Assembly: GCF_001194135.2 (NCBI RefSeq)
Contig: NC_068982.1
Location: forward strand, 128,546,062 to 128,584,519
Length of the DNA: 38,458 nucleotides
Source: Octopus bimaculoides
Taxonomy: Eukaryota
Reading direction: 5' to 3'
Shown here piece by piece: positions 11,645-36,291 of the stretch (position 1 is its first letter; each line of letters opens with the position of its first letter). A program made the translations under genes and the position numbers. Under the pieces are notes generated by a model. That model made no database searches and had not been told where the DNA came from. It saw nothing but the letters and a program-made list of their open reading frames with translations.

Positions 11645-11979
11645 NNNNNNNNNNNNNNNNNNNNNNNNNNNNNNNNNNNNNNNNNNNNNNNNNNNNNNNN
11701 NNNNNNNNNNNNNNNNNNNNNNNNNNNNNNNNNNNNNNNNNNNNNNNNNNNNNNNNNNNNNNNNNNNNNNNNNNNNNNNNNNNNNNNNNNNNNNNNNNNN
11801 NNNNNNNNNNNNNNNNNNNNNNNNNNNNNNNNNNNNNNNNNNNNNNNNNNNNNNNNNNNNNNNNNNNNNNNNNNNNNNNNNNNNNNNNNNNNNNNNNNNN
11901 NNNNNNNNNNNNNNNNNNNNNNNNNNNNNNNNNNNNNNNNNNNNNNNNNNNNNNNNNNNNNNNNNNNNNNNNNNNNNNN
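11645..11979. other. Assembly gap (335 N) inside an intron of the Ig gene
   Basis: Run of N; could hide an exon. Confidence 1.
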
Positions 11980-12272: not shown

Positions 12273-12770
12273 CGCACGCACGCACGCACACACAAATATT
12301 ATATAGACACATACATAAATATGTGTGTGTATGTATATTATTAATGTTTGTCTTATGCCAGATTATAATAAGGCAATATTACATTAAACCAAGGAGTTAC
12401 TCAATACTTTTTGTATAGTACATATGTATTATTCTTTAACAAGAAAACAGTGATGTTGAAGTCTCAGCCTATTTCTTTTTCATACGACTGACTGTCTGAT
12501 GGAAGCTAAGCAGGCCAGAACTTCGAAGTCACTCTCAACACCATTCTTATTAAAGAATAATTATATACACATACACTTATGTATAAATGTATAAGGGATA
12601 AAAGATAAATGGTACACACACACACACACATAGTTTCAGAGAGAGAGAGAGAGAGAGAAAGAGAAGGATAGACACACATGTATACACACATACATAAATA
12701 CATGCATGTATTAATCTCAGAAGAAATTAAGCAATGTGTAGAAATAATTCCCATTTTTAACTGTACTTAC

Positions 12771-13643
12771 CTCCAATGTCAAAACTTGAAGAGGTGTTTG
12801 TAGTCCCATATTTATTTGTGGCCTTACTTGAATATGAACCAGCATCAGTTAAATCCAGATCAGTAAGAAACATTGACGAAACATTATCACTGTAAGAAAC
12901 CTTTGACCGTCGGCTTGATGTGGTTTCATTGCTACTTTTGTACCTGCTAATATCTTCATGGCTACTTTTGTACCTGGTAGTATCATCAAGGCTACTTTTG
13001 TACCTGGTAGTGTCTTCGAGGCTACTTTTGTATCTGTTGGTGTCATCCAGGCTACTTATGTACCTGCTAGTGTCATCCAGGCTACTTATGTACCTGCTAG
13101 TGTCATCCAGGCTACTTTTGTATCTGTTGGTGTCTTCAAGGCTACTTTTGTATCTGTTGGTGTCTTCAAGGCTACTTTTGTACCTGCTATTGTCGTCCAG
13201 GCTACTTAGGTACCTGCTAGTGTCATCCAGGCTACTTTTGTACCTGCTGGTGTCTTCAAGGCTACTTTTGTACCTGCTATTGTCGTCCAGGCTACTTAGG
13301 TATCTGCTAGTGTCATCCAGGCTACTTTTGTACCTGCTGGTGTCTTCGAAGCTACTTTTGTACCTGTTAGTATCATCCAGACTACTTTTGTATCTGTAAC
13401 TGTCTTCATGGCTACTTTTGTATCTGTTTACGTCTTCATGGCTACTTTTGTACCTCTTACTGTCATCGTGGCTACTTCTGTACCTGGTTATATCTTCGTG
13501 GCTACTTTTGTACTTGTTAATGTTTTCTTGGCCACTTCTGTACCTGGTAATATCTTCGTGGCTACTTTTGTACCTGTTAACATCAGAAAGAATTTGGCTT
13601 GTATAAGGACGAGATCTTTTCAAGTAATCCATGTCTGTCGTGT
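12771..13643 (-). CDS. Large coding exon (873 nt, phase 1-1): 22 x 10-aa repeats followed by strands D-G of an I-set Ig domain
   Basis: Acceptor caattcatttcag and donor GGAG|gtaagtac. Stop-free 291-codon frame ending SRRSKVSYSDNVSSMFLTDLDLTDAGSYSSKATNKYGTTNTSSSFDIG, which matches the I-set L-x-I...D-x-G-x-Y-x-C-x-A-x-N-x-x-G motif with Ser in place of Cys. Confidence 0.9.
12916..13575 (-). repeat. Coding minisatellite, 22 x 30 bp
   Basis: All 22 units are exactly 30 bp with no frameshift; plus-strand unit about gctacttttgtacctgctagtgtcatccag. Confidence 0.97.
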
Positions 13644-14318
13644 CTGAAATGAATTGGATTATATGAGAGAAGGAGGGCTGTTGAGTGAAGTTCTAACTCA
13701 ACAGGTAGGTCTCGGCAGTGGTTCCAATATAAATGTGACTTTTAGGTTTTTACTTCTTTTGCATCTAAAGCCCTCTGCCCTGAGTATTAACATTTATTTC
13801 TGATATCCTGAAGTTTATTCTGTTGGCAGCAAGTTATTAAAAATAAACTTTCAATTTACATTTATTTGTACAGATAGAGCTCCACTATTGGCTTTTGTTT
13901 TTGTTGTTTGTTTTTATTTGAAGAAAGTTTTTCCTAAGTTCAGAATGGTTGTCGAAGCTGCTCATGCCACTGCTGCTGCTGCTGCTGCTGGTCCATCTCT
14001 ACTAGCTGTGATGCTTTCTCTTGTGCTACCCACTGCTTCTAAGATATGAAAGATTGTATTCATGAAGGTGGGAGTTACCTCAGCAAGCACAAGTGGCATA
14101 TACTATTTTTTCCAAAAATCATTGGTAATGTTCAGTAAACACCCACACATACACATACTAAGTTACTATTACATAGCTACTCATATCATTAGTTAGTGTA
14201 TAAGGAGCAGCAGCAGTAGCAATGGTAGCATCTACAAGACCAGACCCAGGAATACTTATTTATAAACAGCTGATAGGTAGCTTGATTTTAAACTATATAT
14301 TTTCTCAGTTCATCTTAC

Positions 14319-14352
14319 CCTGTGTTGTCATAGCAACTGAGATAAAATTATC
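14319..14352 (-). CDS. Candidate short exon (34 nt, phase 0-1): DNFISVAMTTQ; ATG at 14331-14329 may be a start codon
   Basis: Acceptor ctgcctttctag after a long pyrimidine tract and strong donor CAGG|gtaaga. Joins in frame to 13643, giving MTTQDTTDMDYL. Confidence 0.6.
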
Positions 14353-17609: not shown

Positions 17610-17769
17610 GAGAAAGACACACACATGCACAACTGTTTATTCATGACTGTACAGTTGTAAAGTGAACTTCTAACCCCCATGCTTTGGGGTCCCATCATAC
17701 TGTAGAATACCTAGAGCAAATGTCTTCTACTATAGCCTCAGTGTGATAAATGCCTTGAGAGTGTGAAAT

Positions 17770-19850
17770 TCTTTAGAGAGGTTGGGATGCGATAATGTTT
17801 CTTGATGTGCGCACTGATGGCTTTTTTGTTATTGAAGAAGACAAGGTTGGCATGATGCCATTGGAGGATGTTTTCAAGGTCTCTGTTCAAGGAGTTAGTG
17901 CAGGTGTAGCATGAGGTGTATTGGTTGTATGTGTATGAAGCTTGACTATGGAAGGTTAGAGAGGAATAAAGGGTGGTGTCAATTGTGTAGGAGTGAACCT
18001 TGTTGGAGGTGATGGTAAATAATCGTTTATGTATAGAAGAAAAAGTATGACGGCTAAAATAAAACCCTGGTGCAAACCATAATTGACAGAGGGAAGGTTG
18101 CAGAATGCACTATCAGCACACACTGTAAGTGTGTGACCTGAGAGGAATACATTGATCCAAGAGATGAGGCATGAATAAAGCTGATAGGCAGGCAGTTTTT
18201 CAAATATTCATATGCCAGATATTGATGAAAGCATTGCTGATATCAAGAGCAACAATACCAGACATGGATAAATGCCTTGCTGATACTGAGAGCAATAACA
18301 CTGCTTTTATCAAACTTCTCGAGTGCAGCAGCATCCGGTGAGTAATATAGGGCAATAAGTTTCAAGTAATTATAATAAACATTAATTGTAGTTATTTAGG
18401 AGGAGAGAAATTCAAGCTGTTACAGGGTTTTTGCTAATGGCTGCCTCCATCTTTGAGATGTTTTCTATGAGTGTAATAAGACAGTAGTTGGCAGGGTCAG
18501 AGAAATTTTACTTCCAGAGAATGGAACAAGTGGTAGATTGTTACTAAAGATCACAGAGGATAACTGAAGAAGCATTATCAGCACTAGTAGCCTTTTTGAT
18601 TTGAAGTGACCAGAGTTACTTTTGTACTTTGCATGTATGTGTGTTTGGTGGTGAGCTTAGTGGAATGGAATAGAAGGGAAAGCTTTGAAGGATAATTATT
18701 TCACATGTACAGTGTTGTTTCGAATGCAAAGTTAACATTGATGCTGGAGATTTTCTCCACAAGAGTGTCGCTCACAAAACCATCATCGTTAAGAAGTGGG
18801 AGGGAAAAAAATTGCACAAAGTTGATAGAGATGTTCTTGACAATTGACCAGAAGGATTGGTTGCAGTTTAATAAGTGTGAGAGCTTATGATTGTTCAATA
18901 TATGGAAGCATTCAGCAGAGCACCTCATCTACACATACTGTAACTATGAGATCTGATAGAATGACATTGATCCAAGAGATGAGACATGAATAGAGCCTAT
19001 AGATAGATATTGATATGTGCAGAATGTAGAGAGAAATGCATAATATGATAGTTTCAGTCACCTGCTCGGCTGTTTCTGTCAAGGGTGAGGTGCATATGAT
19101 GTCAGGGATAGTTATCTTAGAAGTGGCAGAGTTCTGACCAATTAGCTAACTCAAAGTGCCACTATGTCTAGGAGGTAGTGGGAGTACTGTGTATTATGTG
19201 GACGCATGGTCAATAATAATGATAAGGCAGTGATGAGATGATTGGTTAGGTACAGAGACAGATATGATCTAGTAGAGCTTAGTTTGGAGACAAAAAAATA
19301 GATCATAGGTATTGGGAGTGACTGTATGTTGGTCAGTGATGCATGTAGGGGATGGAATGAGTTGATGTAGAGAGCAGAAGATTGCTAAAGATTTGGTTTA
19401 TGCACTGGTGGCATCAGAATAGGTGGGTGTCAGTGTTAAGGAGTGTTGTGAGTGCTGAAGTCATTGATAATGGAGACTTTGGAGTGGAGCAGGGTGAGAC
19501 AGATATCACTAATGCAAGAAGGGATAAGATATGATCTTGGTTTGAGGAGTTTGGAGAGTGGTAGAGAGGGCAAAACTATTTGAAGGAGTAGAAAAGGGAG
19601 ACTTTGAACCAAAGTAACTGGAAGTTTATAGCTAACATCAGAGGATGGAGAGAGTAAAATTTACAAATGTGCTGACACCAACTTTTGACATGAAGTTTGA
19701 GTAAAGAGTTCAATGTAGAGAGCAGAGATGGACTACAGATAGGAGTTGACTATAGATAGAGATTTGTATCTTAGGCAGGAATAGGATGTGTGGTTTGTGT
19801 GTTAGTAAGAGGTGATGATGTATGAAATGTAAGTTGAATCAGAGTCCCAA
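17770..19850 (-). mobile_element. Heavily decayed L2/CR1-superclade LINE ORF2 (APE endonuclease plus RT)
   Basis: Degenerate motifs in expected order on the minus strand: HILFLP.TQI (about 19780), INDFSTHN for GDFNxHN (about 19460), QSFWSIVKNISINF (about 18830), DPANYCLITL for NYRPISL (about 18490), GLHQGFIL for GVPQGS (about 18070), YINDY/IDTTL (about 18000). Confidence 0.75.
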
Positions 19851-20898: not shown

Positions 20899-21080
20899 AT
20901 TTGTTTCAGTCATTTGACAGTTGCCATGCTGGAGCACTGCCTTTAGTTGAACAAATCTCCCCCAGGATTTATTCTTTGTAAGCCTAGTACTTATTCTATC
21001 GGTCTCTTTTGCTGAACCATTAAGTGACGGGGACATAGACACGCCACCTTCGGTTATCAAACGATGCTGGGGGGACAACA

Positions 21081-21117
<37 letters not shown>

Positions 21118-26670: not shown

Positions 26671-27790
26671 TCAAGTGTTGAAAACATTCTGTGATTTTCT
26701 CTGGATCTCAACAATCATGTTAAAACAGCAACCTCTGAGCTGCATTTTCAGCTTGAGGGAGAAATGGCAGTCTGCAGATGCTAAATCTGACAAATAGGGC
26801 AGCTGTGGAAGCGATACCATGTTGTCCTTGGTAAGAAACTCATGAGTGAAGAGAGGTTCATGACAGGGTACATTATTGTCATGAAGAATCCAATTCTTCA
26901 TGCTCCACAAATTCGGTCGCTTTTGCTGAATGTCTTCTGTCAAATGCTTCAAAACATCAGAGTAAAATTCTCGATTGACAGTCTGTCCCTGGGGGATGAA
27001 TTCTTGAGGCACAATACTGCAGATTTCACAAAGAACAATGAGCATGCTCTTGAATGAGCTGTGGCTCTGTCATGCCTTCTTCAGTCATGAAGATGATAAG
27101 CCTCTTCCATTGTGATGACTGCTGCTTCATCTCAGGGTTGTGCCTGTGGACCCAACTCTTCTCACTGCAGATGATCCTCAACATGAAGGATGGGTCGTCA
27201 GCAGCACACTGATGGAGATCTTGACAAACTGCAATGTTCTTTCTGCTCATTGGTCAGCAGGCAGGAGACAAACTTGGCAGTGACATACCACATTCAGATG
27301 TTAGGATTGCCTGCAACAACCCATACGGTGGACCAGCAACATTAGCAATGCCATTGATTGTCCTCCAATGATCCTCATGCACAAGCTGATGAATTTTCTC
27401 CCCATTTCCAGGTCATTTCCTTGTGGCAAGTCTTCCAGACTATTCATCATCTTCCAGGGATGTTCTGCTTTTGTAGAGTCCATACCACTCAGAACATTAT
27501 GTATGACCCATTGCTTCATCGCCATAAGCTTGCCAAAACATGCTCAATGTCTCTGTAGCAGATTTCCCAAGTTTATCACAAAATTTCACGTTGGCTCTTT
27601 GTTCCAACTGCTGCCCATAACAAAATTGCAGACTACAGTATACACGTGATCACAAAAACAGAAATTTCACAACTTGCGAAGTAAACACAGTGATGTCACT
27701 TGGCACACTGCTTCATGAAGGTCACTGCTAATTCTCAATGTGCACACAACTGTGTGCTGCCATCTGTTGGCACACTACGGAGCTAGTCTA
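26671..27790 (-). pseudogene. Mariner (Tc1/mariner, probably irritans-like) transposase pseudogene, 3' end truncated
   Basis: Across frameshifts: LEQRANVKFCDKLGKSATETLSMFWQAYGDEAM; IICSEKSWVHRHNPEMKQQSSQW (first catalytic D lost); MLIVL...EFIPQGQTVN..FY..VL; WILHDNNVPCH; LPYLSDLASADCHF for PYSPDLAP.DF. Confidence 0.92.
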
Positions 27791-27809: not shown

Positions 27810-27960
27810 ATTTCAGTCATTTGACTGTGGCCATGCAGGAGACTTATTCTTTGTAAGCCTAGTACTTATTCTATCGGCCTCTTTTGCTGAACTGTTAGGT
27901 TAAGGGACATAAACACACCAACATCAGTTGTCAAGTAATGGTAGGTAGACAAAGACACAC
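27810..27960 (-). mobile_element. CORE-like SINE 3' half, running into (TA)n and the gap
   Basis: tttcagtcatttgactgtggccatgc...cttattctttgtaagcctagtacttattctatcgg. Confidence 0.8.
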
Positions 27961-27972
27961 ACACATAAATAC

Positions 27973-28005
<33 letters not shown>

Positions 28006-28245
28006 NNNNNNNNNNNNNNNNNNNNNNNNNNNNNNNNNNNNNNNNNNNNNNNNNNNNNNNNNNNNNNNNNNNNNNNNNNNNNNNNNNNNNNNNNNNNNNN
28101 NNNNNNNNNNNNNNNNNNNNNNNNNNNNNNNNNNNNNNNNNNNNNNNNNNNNNNNNNNNNNNNNNNNNNNNNNNNNNNNNNNNNNNNNNNNNNNNNNNNN
28201 NNNNNNNNNNNNNNNNNNNNNNNNNNNNNNNNNNNNNNNNNNNNN
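28006..28245. other. Assembly gap (240 N)
   Basis: Run of N. Confidence 1.
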
Positions 28246-28291: not shown

Positions 28292-29807
28292 ATGGCTAGT
28301 CAGAGATTGGCCATTGGAGTTGCACCTCCACCATCAAATGAACTCTACATGAGGATGCTGCTAGAAAAGATCAATGACCTCATAAAGCACTTGAGATGGA
28401 AGGCATACTTCTATGACCAAGCCATGCTATCCTCAGAAGCCAATGCTTACAATATCAGATCCAGGCAGTTCCCACCCAGATCAAAGCCTCGAAGACTTTG
28501 AAGCAGACCTACTAGACATCATCATCCCTAAACTGAGATTCCATAAGTCCTCTTGCTCCTTTCAGCACAAGCACTCTTCTGATTTATGTCTCTTAAAAAA
28601 TTCAGATAGGGCTTTACTCTTGTCTGACAAAACAAAAAGTATATATAATGTAAACACATGCACATATGATAGGCTTTTAGCATCACACTGAAATATTAAC
28701 ATACTTCCTCACATGCATACAATAGTATTGACAATGAAGCCAAACAGTTGACCAACAGTCTAGGTATAGCTGATGGGTTTGAAGCATTAGCTAAGAGAAA
28801 TGCCTTTGTCACCATCAAAGACCACAAACCAAACTTTGCCTCTTACCCTGAATGCTGCCTGATTAACCTGGCAAAATTGGAAATCAGGCTGGCAAGCAAG
28901 CATAAAATGAGAAAGATCAATAATGACATAAGGAGAGCATCTAGTCTCCTTATGGCATTGTGCCAATGAGATTATTTCGTGGTTTAAAGTTCACCCAATT
29001 TGATATATGTGGATTTTTATCCATGTATATCAAAAAGGTTCTGTCTGATAGGAATTTTATTACAGTAGTGATAGGGACATAGACATAATTATGCTTGCTA
29101 GGAAAACACAGCTGTTCAATAAAGGTTTGACTTGGATCAAACAAACTGACCTAGTAGGCTCTTTCGATGTGACAATGGGAGCTTTCTACAGCACAATGTC
29201 TGCGACTTCATAGGATTGTATATACTGGACACCTTAACAAAGAGGTCCTTGCCTGTCCTTTTTGGTTTATACAGAGATGCCACTTTAGCCATCTCTGAAG
29301 GGGCTAACAGACATATCCTAGATAGGCTTAGGAAGGGCCTAATTTGCACCCTTAGTTCCCTTGGACTCAAGATTATGATAGAGACCAACCTTATCATTGT
29401 CAACTTTTTAGACGTTACATTGCACCTGGGTACCTGTTCATACCCAGGTGCAATGGTTGTTCATACAGACCCTACTGCAAACCAAACAAAAAGCTGTTGT
29501 AGATTAACACAGCCTCCTGCCACCCACCTATTATGTTCAAGAACCCAATGAAGGGTGTCAGTAAGAGGATTTTGAACCTGTCTTCCAGTCAAGAAATTTT
29601 GGATGCAACAGACCCCTCTTATAATGAGGCTATGGCTCTAGTGGGTTTAAGCACCGCATGTCTTATACACTGGGCCCTAACACCCACAAAAGAAGGTGCC
29701 ACCATAAATTCATTAGGTTTGCTCCACCCTTCTCACTCCACATGAAGACTTGTGTGAAAAGGATATTCCTTAGATTAGTGGGTAAACACTTCATACAGTC
29801 ACATTGA
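28292..29807 (+). mobile_element. Decayed Penelope-like retroelement (RT region), truncated before any GIY-YIG endonuclease
   Basis: Across frameshifts: LLEKINDLIKHLRWKAYFY; AFVTIKDHKPNFASYPECCLINLAKLEI; FDVTMGAF; GLYRDATL for YRDD; GLKIMIETNLIIVNFLDVTL; FIRFAPPFSLHMKTCVKRIFLRLVGKHF. Confidence 0.88.
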
Positions 29808-35359: not shown

Positions 35360-35850
35360 CCTGCGTGCATGTGTGTATGTTTGTTACTGTATCCATGTCT
35401 TCAGGTGATAGTTGTAAACTAGTGCCACTGTCATATGAGCTATGTCATCCATTTCCAATGTTCTGGCAAAAATATCTGGCCATGCAGAAATATTACCTTA
35501 CATGGAAACGGGTAAGGATTGGTGGCAGGAAGGGCATCTAGCCATAGAAAATCCACCTCAATATATTCCATTCAATCCTTGCAAGCACGGACAGGTCGAT
35601 GTTAAAATGACGATGTATATGTATGTGTGTTTGTGTGTACCCTTGTCCAGACATCACATAATGGTTGTAAATGAGCATCATCATCATACAAGAGAAGTTG
35701 TTTGTTTCCAGTCTTCTGTGGAAAACATGATTAGCCATGGGGAAATTTTGATGATAGGAAGGGCACCTGATTTTCGAAAATGTGCCTCAGCAAATTCCAT
35801 CTGACTCATACAAGCATAAGAAAGTGGACATTAAATGATTATGATGATGA
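35155..35850 (+). mobile_element. Composite: CORE-like SINE head, (GT)n and two tandem RTE-type tails
   Basis: Head ggtatggtagtgtggtaagaag...ggttcagtccc...ccttgggcaag. Tails end atccttgcaagcacggacaggtcgatgttaaaatgacgatg (about 35615) and catacaagcataagaaagtggacattaaatgattatgatg (about 35848). Confidence 0.7.
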
Positions 35851-35880
35851 CTACAATGATAATGAAGATTTTAAAAAATA

Positions 35881-36050
35881 GGTGCAGGAGAGGCTGTGTG
35901 GTAAGTAGCTTGCTTACCAACCACATGGTTCCGGGTTCAGTCCCACTGCGTGGCACCTTGGGCAAGTGTCTTCTACTAAGCCTCGGGCCGACCAAAGCCT
36001 TATGAGTGGATTTGGTAGACGGAAACTGAAAGAAGCCCGTCGTATATATG

Positions 36051-36081
<31 letters not shown>

Positions 36082-36291
36082 ATGTGTGTGTTTGTGTTTG
36101 TCCCCCCAACATCGCTTGACAACCGATGCTGGTGTGTTTACGTCCCCGTAACTTAGCGGTTTGGCAAAAGAAACTGATAGAATAAGTACTAGGCTTACAA
36201 AGAATAAGTCCTGGGGTCGATTTGCTCGACTAAAGGCGGTGCTCCAGCATGGGCACAGTCAAATGACTGAAACAAGTAAAAAAAAAAAAAA
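35881..36291 (+). mobile_element. Best-preserved full-length tRNA-derived CORE-like SINE with poly(A) end
   Basis: A-box-like ggctgtgtggtaa, B-box-like ggttcagtccc (35934-35944), ccttgggcaagt CORE-like segment, internal TA/GT microsatellite, 3' stem cagtc-aaat-gactg and A14. Confidence 0.92.

What the first reader, a model, noticed from the sequence alone, without database searches (positions are those of the whole stretch)
12771..12915. Orphan half Ig domain: strands D-G follow the repeats, strands A-C are missing
Seen: directly after unit 22 come SRRSKVSYSDN (D), VSSMFLTDL (E), DAGSYSSKATNKYG (F, Cys to Ser) and TTNTSSSFDI (G). No A-B-C strands or core Trp occur in this exon or in 14319-14352, and I found no Ig-like exon in the 24 kb upstream. 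Inference, two options: (a) a distant exon supplies A-C, so about 250 aa of repeats are looped out of the C-D region of a folded Ig; or (b) the isoform begins with a half domain that is unfolded or completed in trans by strand exchange. The unit R-Y-K-S-S-x-E-D loosely resembles an Ig D-strand entry, so the array may have grown from the domain itself (speculative).
Basis: partly seen in the sequence, partly recalled or inferred. Interest (0 to 1): 0.75.

Follow-up and report, generated by a model that had tools for sequence, protein, structure and literature searches.

The report
Ig half-exon with amplified C strand
The "orphan half Ig domain" is real, but the 22 repeats in front of it are copies of the domain's own C strand (core Trp changed to Arg), so this looks like the second exon of a two-exon Ig domain turning into a disordered repeat region; it is an instructive case, not a new kind of system.

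Summary
On the minus strand, 12771-12915 encodes strands D-G of an I-set Ig domain (Pfam PF07679, 28.6 bits against a cut-off of 23.7, profile positions 42-88 of 90). It ends an 873-nt open exon (12771-13643) with phase-1 borders at both ends.

The statement that strand C is missing is wrong. The 22 in-frame 30-bp units (RYKSSxEDxx) sit where the C strand belongs. The last unit's Arg lies 33 residues before D-A-G-x-Y, the same distance as Trp in the neighbouring Ig domain and in titin. The first unit's Arg lies 8 residues after the "SQ" motif, as Trp does in the paralogous exon. Pfam, titin structures and the paralogue all align R-Y-K onto W-Y-K, and TGG to AGG is one base change.

The next Ig domain downstream is split into an A-B exon (5238-5353) and a C-G exon (513-716). 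Strands A-B are therefore expected on a separate exon. None is detectable in the 24.8 kb upstream, but the power of that search is low.

Best reading: the C-strand segment was amplified in place, leaving a Ser-rich, evenly charged, probably disordered stretch followed by decaying strands. Expression is untested and no orthologues could be found. Interest is modest.

The parts
12771..12915 (-). Relic strands C'/D-E-F-G of an I-set Ig domain (SRRSKVSYSDN...FDIG). F-strand Cys is now Ser; the Tyr corner DAGSY is kept. It ends at the donor GGAG|gtaagt (GT at 12770-12769, phase 1).
   Evidence: Pfam I-set 28.6 bits, E=1.5e-6, profile 42-88/90. A titin-only HMM gives 25.1 bits. Ser+Thr is 38% and hydrophobic residues 19%, against 16% and 29% in the same part of exon Y.
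12916..13575 (-). Array of 22 in-frame 30-bp units, consensus AGGTACAAAAGTAGCCTTGAAGACACTAGC = RYKSSLEDTS. These are amplified copies of the C strand and C-C' turn (W-Y-K-x-x-x-E-D) with Trp changed to Arg. The edge units (RYKSSHEDIT/S) look oldest. Units 9-11 and 12-14 form an 88/90-identical 90-bp duplication.
   Evidence: Tandem Repeats Finder: period 30, 21.5 copies, 83% matches, 0% indels. Unit table. R of unit 22 aligns to Trp of titin C strands and to I-set profile position 34. The spacings are canonical at both edges of the array. pN/pS among units is 0.39 in this frame, against 1.78 and 0.54 in the other two. The unit occurs nowhere else in the window.
13576..13643 (-). Unique 5' part of the exon: (D)TTDMDYLKRSRPYTSQILSDVN. 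'SQILSDVN' corresponds to 'SQSDVEVT', which precedes Trp in exon Y. There is an in-frame ATG at 13632-13630 (gacATGG). The acceptor tttcag ends at 13644 (phase 1).
   Evidence: Sequence reading. The BLASTP alignment with exon Y starts at SDV. The SQ-to-R distance equals the SQ-to-W distance, 8 residues.
5238..5353 (-). Exon X: strands A-B of the next Ig domain (PPVILLPLVDEYRSIGESVTFSIT), with donor ACTG|gtaagt in phase 1. The strong acceptor cacag|G is phase 2. A weaker acceptor cccaag|TT at 5324 is phase 1 and would be in frame with the donor of the finding exon.
   Evidence: Top hit of the titin-only A-B HMM at 9.5 bits. Joined to exon Y it extends the I-set match to profile 12-90.
513..716 (-). 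Exon Y: strands C-G of the same Ig domain (VRSQSDVEVTWSHNEDII...CELTVY), phase 1 at both ends. It is the intact paralogue of the finding exon.
   Evidence: Pfam I-set 50.7 bits, profile 24-90/90. BLASTP against the collapsed finding exon: E=2e-9, 33% identity over 63 aa. AlphaFold2 on X+Y predicts six strands, pTM 0.44.
14319..14352 (-). It is in frame with the finding exon but unverified and not Ig-like.
   Evidence: Sequence reading. No Pfam match when joined to the start of the exon.

Best explanation
The exon 12771-13643 (minus strand) is the distal, C-to-G half-exon of an I-set Ig domain. The gene splits its Ig domains into an A-B exon and a C-G exon with phase-1 borders. Inside this exon, the 30-bp segment that began at the C-strand Trp codon (W-Y-K-S-S-H-E-D-I-T, now Arg through TGG to AGG) was amplified in place to 22 tandem copies, presumably by replication slippage or unequal exchange. 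One 90-bp block was duplicated recently.

The product is about 220 residues that are Ser-rich, evenly charged (K+R 19%, D+E 19%), free of Pro, Trp and Cys, and poor in hydrophobic residues. Relic strands D-G follow, and they have lost the F-strand Cys and much of their hydrophobic core. Such a sequence cannot form a normal Ig sandwich. It most likely acts as a flexible disordered linker inside or at the start of a multi-Ig protein. It carries about 42 Ser/Thr-x-x-Asp/Glu motifs, which match the casein-kinase-2 consensus.

Shown: the I-set relic, the register of the array, the two-exon layout of the neighbouring domain, and the open reading frame with consensus splice sites. Inferred: the slippage mechanism, the disorder, phosphorylation, and that the exon is expressed at all.
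For: I-set match above Pfam's cut-off.

The last unit aligns without gaps to titin C strands, R on W and Y-K on Y-K, in four titin domains, and to I-set profile position 34, which is the Trp position.

A titin-only HMM gains 4-5 bits when one unit is placed before the relic, rising from 24.4-25.1 to 29.0 bits, with an ungapped alignment.

An in-silico R-to-W change raises the I-set score from 27.4 to 35.3 bits and extends the match to profile position 31.

The spacings are canonical at both edges. The last R is 33 residues before D of DAG, as in exon Y and titin. The first R is 8 residues after 'SQ', as Trp is in exon Y.

The exon collapsed to one unit aligns with paralogous exon Y at E=2e-9, starting upstream of the array.

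The neighbouring domain is split after strand B by a phase-1 intron. Split Ig domains are known in NCAM, CD4 and CD3-delta (PMC5216574).

Coding signals: 291 open codons, no indels in 660 bp, and pN/pS 0.39 in frame against 1.78 and 0.54 out of frame.

AlphaFold2 in single-sequence mode gives mean pLDDT 48 and no strands in the tail, but six strands for the intact X+Y domain.

Composition of the relic has drifted towards Ser/Thr.
Against: There is no transcript evidence and no orthologue, so expression and conservation are untested.

A ten-residue unit carries little information. Rotated, it also resembles the C'-D consensus (s-x-R-x-K-x-x-x-E), so the assignment to the C strand rests mainly on register.

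Under a random-substitution model the absence of stop codons in the array is only weakly significant (P about 0.09). Concerted evolution among units also confounds pN/pS.

The perfect phase-1 donor of the exon does not fit the strong phase-2 acceptor of exon X. The downstream splice partner is therefore uncertain, and an assembly gap (11645-11979) lies between the two exons.

AlphaFold2 without an alignment is weak evidence.
Confidence: 0.55

Rival explanations
1. Decaying pseudo-exon. A tandemly duplicated Ig half-exon lost its partner A-B exon and its core residues, picked up a minisatellite expansion, and is no longer spliced into any mRNA. The open frame is residual.
For: Core Trp and F-strand Cys are lost, and Ser/Thr have drifted to 38%. 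No A-B exon lies in the 24.8 kb upstream. The donor phase does not match the strong acceptor of exon X. No database protein contains the exon. The no-stop statistic is weak (P about 0.09).
Against: 291 codons are open in DNA of about 32-40% GC. Both splice sites match the consensus and are in symmetric phase 1. There are no indels in 660 bp. pN/pS is 0.39 in the reading frame only. The relic still passes Pfam's gathering score. The databases searched evidently lack this lineage, since even a mariner fragment found nothing, so the absence of annotated proteins says little.
Confidence: 0.25
2. An A-B (or A-C) exon outside the window is spliced to this exon and a folded Ig forms, with about 210 residues of repeats looped out.
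For: The exon's phase-1 acceptor is compatible with a phase-1 donor of an X-type A-B exon. Introns in this locus are several kb long: the X-Y intron is 4.5 kb. The window ends 24.8 kb upstream and contains a gap at 28006-28245.
Against: The only C-strand candidates carry Arg at the buried Trp position. The F-strand Cys is gone, and hydrophobic content in D-G is 19% against 29% in exon Y. AlphaFold2 predicts no strands in this tail. No A-B exon is detectable in the window.
Confidence: 0.1
3. The unit derives from the C'-D segment, or from an unrelated minisatellite that inserted by chance. The true C strand was then deleted rather than amplified.
For: The rotated unit TS-R-Y-K-S-S-L-E-D resembles the post-array C'-D segment S-R-R-S-K-V-S-Y-S-D and exon Y's SSKYSISKEHD.
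Against: The Ser codons differ in family: AGY in the units and mostly TCN in the relic. The array is in C-strand register at both edges, 8 and 33 residues. The HMM alignments are ungapped through the last unit with R on W. The pre-array sequence matches the pre-Trp sequence of exon Y. No other copy of the unit is present in the window.
Confidence: 0.1

Closest known systems
I-set immunoglobulin domains of titin-type tandem Ig proteins (best solved matches: titin I65-I70, PDB 3b43; also MyBP-C and NCAM2)
   Same: The D-E-F-G strand signature is shared: Tyr corner D-x-G-x-Y, A-x-N-x-x-G, and the W-Y-K C-strand motif at 33 residues from the corner. The neighbouring domain lacks the B-strand Cys, as do many intracellular muscle Ig domains.
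   Different: The core Trp is Arg and the F-strand Cys is Ser. The C strand is present in 22 copies. A-B strands are not in the exon. The segment is predicted not to fold.
Split-exon Ig domains of cell-adhesion-type IgSF genes (NCAM, CD4, CD3-delta)
   Same: An Ig domain is interrupted by an intron, with phase-1 borders. The neighbouring domain here is split after strand B (PMC5216574).
   Different: The family identity of this gene is unknown. For the finding exon, only the distal half-exon has been found.
Disordered repeat segments between Ig domains of giant muscle proteins (titin PEVK and similar); comparison from general knowledge
   Same: A low-complexity, charged, repetitive stretch is embedded among I-set domains, with a plausible role as linker or spring.
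   Different: The composition is Ser/Asp/Glu/Lys/Arg/Tyr with no Pro, not Pro/Glu/Val/Lys. The units are 10 residues long, not about 28. Here the repeats are visibly derived from an Ig strand and share an exon with the Ig remnant.
Coding minisatellites (in-frame tandem repeats with higher-order duplications)
   Same: The 30-bp unit is a multiple of three. The middle of the array is homogenised and the edge units are divergent. There is a recent 90-bp block duplication and no indels.
   Different: The seed sequence can be traced to a defined beta strand of a folded domain.

Membership tests
Pfam I-set (PF07679) | HMM score at or above the curated gathering score | tested here: met
   28.6 bits against 23.7, E=1.5e-6, but only profile positions 42-88 of 90. 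With the last two units added, the match covers 32-87 at 30.5 bits.
Pfam I-set (PF07679) | Complete A-to-G beta sandwich in the encoded product | tested here: not met
   The exon contains no A-B strands. None is detectable in the upstream 24.8 kb, but that search has low power. The transcript is unknown.
Pfam I-set (PF07679) | Conserved core Trp in strand C | tested here: not met
   All 22 units carry Arg or Lys (AGG, AGA or AAG) at the position that aligns to Trp.
Pfam I-set (PF07679) | Tyr corner D-x-G-x-Y and A-x-N-x-x-G in strand F and the F-G turn | tested here: met
   DAGSYSSKATNKYG.
Pfam I-set (PF07679) | B-F disulfide cysteines (not universal in intracellular I-set domains) | tested here: not met
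   The F-strand Cys is Ser and no B strand is present.
Split-exon Ig gene layout (NCAM type) | An intron inside the Ig domain, with phase-1 exon borders | tested here: met
   For the neighbouring domain, exon X has donor ACTG|gt and exon Y has acceptor ccag|TT, both phase 1, and the split lies at I-set profile position about 23/24. The finding exon itself is phase 1 at both ends.
Titin PEVK-type spring segment | Pro/Glu/Val/Lys-rich repeats of about 28 residues | tested here: not met
   No Pro, a 10-residue period, and 33% Ser+Thr.
Titin PEVK-type spring segment | Entropic-spring behaviour in a sarcomeric protein | not testable with these tools
   No expression, localisation or mechanical data. 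The gene's identity beyond 'I-set protein' is unknown.
Coding minisatellite | In-frame tandem units without frameshifts, and evidence of constraint in one frame | tested here: met
   0% indels over 21.5 copies. pN/pS is 0.39 in frame against 1.78 and 0.54 in the other frames.

The most novel reading that the evidence does not exclude
This is a snapshot of a folded Ig domain being converted into a disordered, possibly phospho-regulated linker. A single beta-strand coding segment is amplified inside its own exon, and the exon stays expressed. That would be a traceable origin of a repeat region between Ig domains from Ig sequence itself.
Probability: 0.3. Interest if true: 0.55.

Novelty: new variant of a known kind. 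Interest (0 to 1): 0.33.

Why it matters
If the exon is expressed, it gives a clear, datable example of how disordered repeat linkers in multi-Ig proteins can arise. The route would be in-place amplification of a strand-coding segment after, or together with, loss of the core Trp, rather than insertion of foreign sequence. It is also a caution for annotation: a partial Ig-domain match that follows a repeat array can hide the missing strand inside the repeats. Without transcript or comparative data it remains a single-locus curiosity.

Tried and rejected
Word-indexed homologue searches found nothing. The queries were the whole exon, the neighbouring Ig domain and, as a calibrator, a mariner transposase fragment. 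The calibrator's failure shows that this database barely covers the lineage, so 'no orthologue' is not evidence of novelty.

The exact-sequence look-up of the 291-aa ORF found no record.

The exhaustive HMMER search with the N-terminus plus array gave 287 hits at E<=0.001. The top proteins inspected are unrelated ten-residue periodic repeats such as DISRYFKIFQ, GDVSRGNESL and DSSRYKPVTA. None of the listed 150 contains RYKSS, and none has a convincing Ig domain. I rejected them as periodicity and composition matches.

The ORF 13965-14102 (-)...PTFMNTIFHILEAVGSTRESITA..., looked like A-B strands by eye. It scores 2.9 bits (E=13), has no BLASTP alignment to exon X, and has no donor in the right place. 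Rejected.

The search for DNA-level paralogy between the Ig exons and their flanks returned only microsatellite noise.

Pfam on exon X alone found nothing, so Pfam cannot detect A-B half-exons.

Rfam gave no match. The bacterial promoter and terminator scan is irrelevant to a eukaryotic locus. The literature search found no precedent for strand amplification.

I considered that the AG|GTAC in each unit could act as a phase-2 donor matching the strong phase-2 acceptor of exon X, which would skip the Ig relic. This is in frame, but the donors are weak and a phase match has a 1-in-3 chance. I kept it only as a note.

Full report
**Setting.** The window is eukaryotic genomic DNA of roughly 30-43% GC. 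It is full of microsatellites and interspersed repeats and has three assembly gaps, at 2272-2359, 11645-11979 and 28006-28245. From memory, the repeat landscape resembles a cephalopod genome, but I could not test that. The feature lies on the minus strand.

**The observation.** The minus strand has a 311-codon stop-free frame at 12760-13692. Consensus splice signals bound an exon at 12771-13643: acceptor tttcag|AC and donor GGAG|gtaagt. It is 873 nt long and phase 1 at both ends, which is the usual phase class of Ig exons.

The exon encodes, in order:
- 22 unique residues, (D)TTDMDYLKRSRPYTSQILSDVN;
- 22 in-frame ten-residue units with consensus RYKSSLEDTS. Tandem Repeats Finder reports period 30, 21.5 copies, 83% matches and 0% indels; the unit table is;

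Pfam I-set (PF07679) matches that tail at E=1.5e-6 and 28.6 bits, above the gathering score of 23.7, over profile positions 42-88 of 90. Against solved structures the best matches are titin tandem Ig domains (3b43, E=1.6e-22 summed over six domains), followed by contactins.

Four lines of evidence agree.

1. phmmer aligns the last unit, without gaps, to the C strand of four titin domains. For example, isRYKssnettssrrskvsysdnv... aligns with IAWYKEHTKLRSAPAYKMQFKNNV..., with R on W and Y-K on Y-K or H-K.
2. Pfam starts its I-set alignment at profile position 32 when the last two units are present. That places the unit's Arg on profile position 34, the position where exon Y's Trp aligns. Changing that Arg to Trp in silico, used purely as a diagnostic, raises the score from 27.4 to 35.3 bits and gives an ungapped 57-residue alignment to profile 31-87.
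3. I built an HMM only from titin domains, so it is independent of the window. It scores the relic alone at 24.4-25.1 bits and the relic plus one unit at 29.0 bits. The alignment is ungapped, with VN-R-YK on va-W-yk.
4. The register is right at both edges of the array. The last unit's Arg is 33 residues before the Asp of D-A-G-x-Y, the same as the Trp-to-Asp distance in the neighbouring domain and in titin I65. The first unit's Arg is 8 residues after the 'SQ' motif, the same as Trp in the paralogous exon (SQSDVEVTW against SQILSDVNR).

The exon collapsed to a single unit aligns with that paralogue at E=2e-9, with 33% identity over 63 residues. The alignment starts upstream of the array.

This is what is expected if a 30-bp segment starting at the Trp codon was amplified in place. 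TGG to AGG is a single base change, and all 22 units carry AGG, AGA or AAG. The edge units (RYKSSHEDIT and RYKSSHEDIS) are closest to exon Y's W-SHNEDII. The central units are homogenised (L-[DE]-D-T-[SN]) and include an 88/90-identical 90-bp block duplication (units 9-11 and 12-14). This is the usual pattern of a growing array.

The source, however, is strand C and the C-C' turn, not the D-strand entry. The rotated unit also resembles the C'-D consensus, so I keep that option as a minor rival. Against it, the Ser codon families differ (AGY in the units, mostly TCN in the relic), and the two-edge register favours strand C.

**Gene context.** Local HMM scans of every stop-to-stop frame of at least 12 residues, on both strands, find exactly three Ig-like pieces in the window. 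They are the finding exon, an exon at 513-716 and an exon at 5238-5353.

- Exon Y (513-716, phase 1 at both ends) encodes VRSQSDVEVTW...CELTVY. It matches I-set profile 24-90 at 50.7 bits.
- Exon X (5238-5353) encodes ...PPVILLPLVDEYRSIGESVTFSIT and ends with a phase-1 donor.
- Joined, the two extend the I-set match to profile 12-90 (52.8 bits). AlphaFold2 in single-sequence mode predicts six beta strands for the joined domain, with pTM 0.44.

This gene therefore encodes at least one Ig domain on two exons, split after strand B. Split Ig domains are known from NCAM, CD4 and CD3-delta (PMC5216574). The finding exon is the Y-type half. On this reading, the absence of A-B from the exon is ordinary gene structure, not an anomaly.

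Whether an X-type partner still exists is open. A titin-only A-B HMM ranks the real exon X first in the whole window at 9.5 bits, and finds nothing comparable in 13644-38458 (the next best is 5.4 bits, on the plus strand). Power is low, because Pfam does not see exon X alone at all. In addition, the X-Y intron is 4.5 kb, the window ends 24.8 kb upstream, and one gap lies in that stretch.

The downstream partner is also uncertain. The perfect phase-1 donor at 12770 does not fit the strong phase-2 acceptor of exon X (cacag|G). It fits only a weaker phase-1 acceptor at 5324 (cccaag|TT). That splice would give the textbook junction ...FDIG-VDPLS-PPVIL... Alternatively, an exon is hidden in the gap at 11645-11979.

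**Is it coding?** Several signals favour a maintained reading frame.
- There are 291 open codons, about 70 of them non-repetitive, in AT-rich DNA.
- Both splice sites match the consensus and are in matching phase.
- The array has no indels in 660 bp.
- Differences between units are concentrated at synonymous sites in the RYKSS frame only. pN/pS is 0.39, against 1.78 and 0.54 in the other two frames.
- Tyr2 and Ser4 are invariant, and Arg1, Ser5 and Asp8 nearly so, while AGG/AGA, GAC/GAT and CTN vary.

The evidence is moderate, not strong. Random placement of the same substitutions gives zero stops with P of about 0.09, and concerted evolution blurs pN/pS.

**What the product would be.**
- The array has 33% Ser+Thr, 19% Lys+Arg, 19% Asp+Glu, 10% Tyr and 10% hydrophobic residues. 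It has no Pro, Trp or Cys. It carries 42 S/T-x-x-D/E motifs, which match the casein-kinase-2 consensus according to established knowledge; that they are used is inference.
- The relic D-G strands have 38% Ser+Thr and 19% hydrophobic residues. The same part of exon Y has 16% and 29%.
- AlphaFold2 in single-sequence mode gives mean pLDDT 48 and no residue at or above 70. It predicts no strand in the tail, although it does predict the strands of the intact neighbouring domain.

I conclude that the segment cannot form a normal Ig fold. If translated, it is a disordered, evenly charged stretch (equal positive and negative residues) ending in vestigial strands.

**External evidence.** None could be obtained. 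The word-indexed protein searches were empty even for a mariner fragment, so the database lacks this lineage. The exact-sequence look-up was also empty. The exhaustive HMMER search returned only unrelated ten-residue periodic proteins. The unit occurs nowhere else in the window.

**Verdict.** The feature is a degenerate I-set half-exon whose own C-strand segment became a coding minisatellite, which makes it a new variant of known things (Ig exons and in-frame repeat expansion). It is not a new system. Its value depends on expression and on comparative data, and neither is available here.

Noticed in passing
window 513-716 and 5238-5353, minus strand: A complete I-set Ig domain of the same gene is encoded on two exons: A-B on 5238-5353 and C-G on 513-716, with a 4.5-kb phase-1 intron after strand B. 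The B-strand Cys is Ile and the F-strand Cys is kept.
   Followed up: yes
window 12916-13575, minus strand: 16 of the 22 units contain AG|GTAC, a weak donor-like site in phase 2. Spliced to the strong phase-2 acceptor of exon X (cacag|G at 5354/5353) it would stay in frame (AG+G = Arg) and skip the Ig relic. This may be coincidence, since a phase match has a 1-in-3 chance.
   Followed up: partly
window 13156-13335, minus strand: Units 9-11 and 12-14 form a 90-bp higher-order duplication that is 88/90 identical, so the array has grown recently.
   Followed up: yes
window 26674-27649, minus strand: A mariner-type transposase remnant. The ORF 26674-27069 hits Pfam Transposase_1 at E=1.5e-4 and 22 bits, just under the cut-off of 24. 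Adjacent broken ORFs run to 27649.
   Followed up: partly
window 114-252, 3420-3780, 4174-4295; also 35830-36260, 20924-21110, 27841-28005: Two families of short interspersed repeats, with copies 83-96% identical, are scattered through the presumed introns. One copy lies about 100 bp downstream of exon Y.
   Followed up: partly
window 6250-6450, 7050-7250, 8458-9540, 10217-10850: Long microsatellite and low-complexity tracts (trinucleotide and dinucleotide runs of up to about 1 kb) lie in the interval between the finding exon and exon X. They give long spurious ORFs in several frames.
   Followed up: no
window 2272-2359, 11645-11979, 28006-28245: Three runs of N (assembly gaps). The second lies between the finding exon and exon X, and the third lies in the upstream region searched for an A-B exon. 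Small exons could be hidden there.
   Followed up: no
window 17741-18207 (-), 28395-29742 (+), 4826-5134 (-): Broken ORFs that look like retrotransposon reverse-transcriptase remnants by eye (for example ...LYINDYLPS...). The four ORFs tested from these intervals had no Pfam match at E<=0.01.
   Followed up: partly
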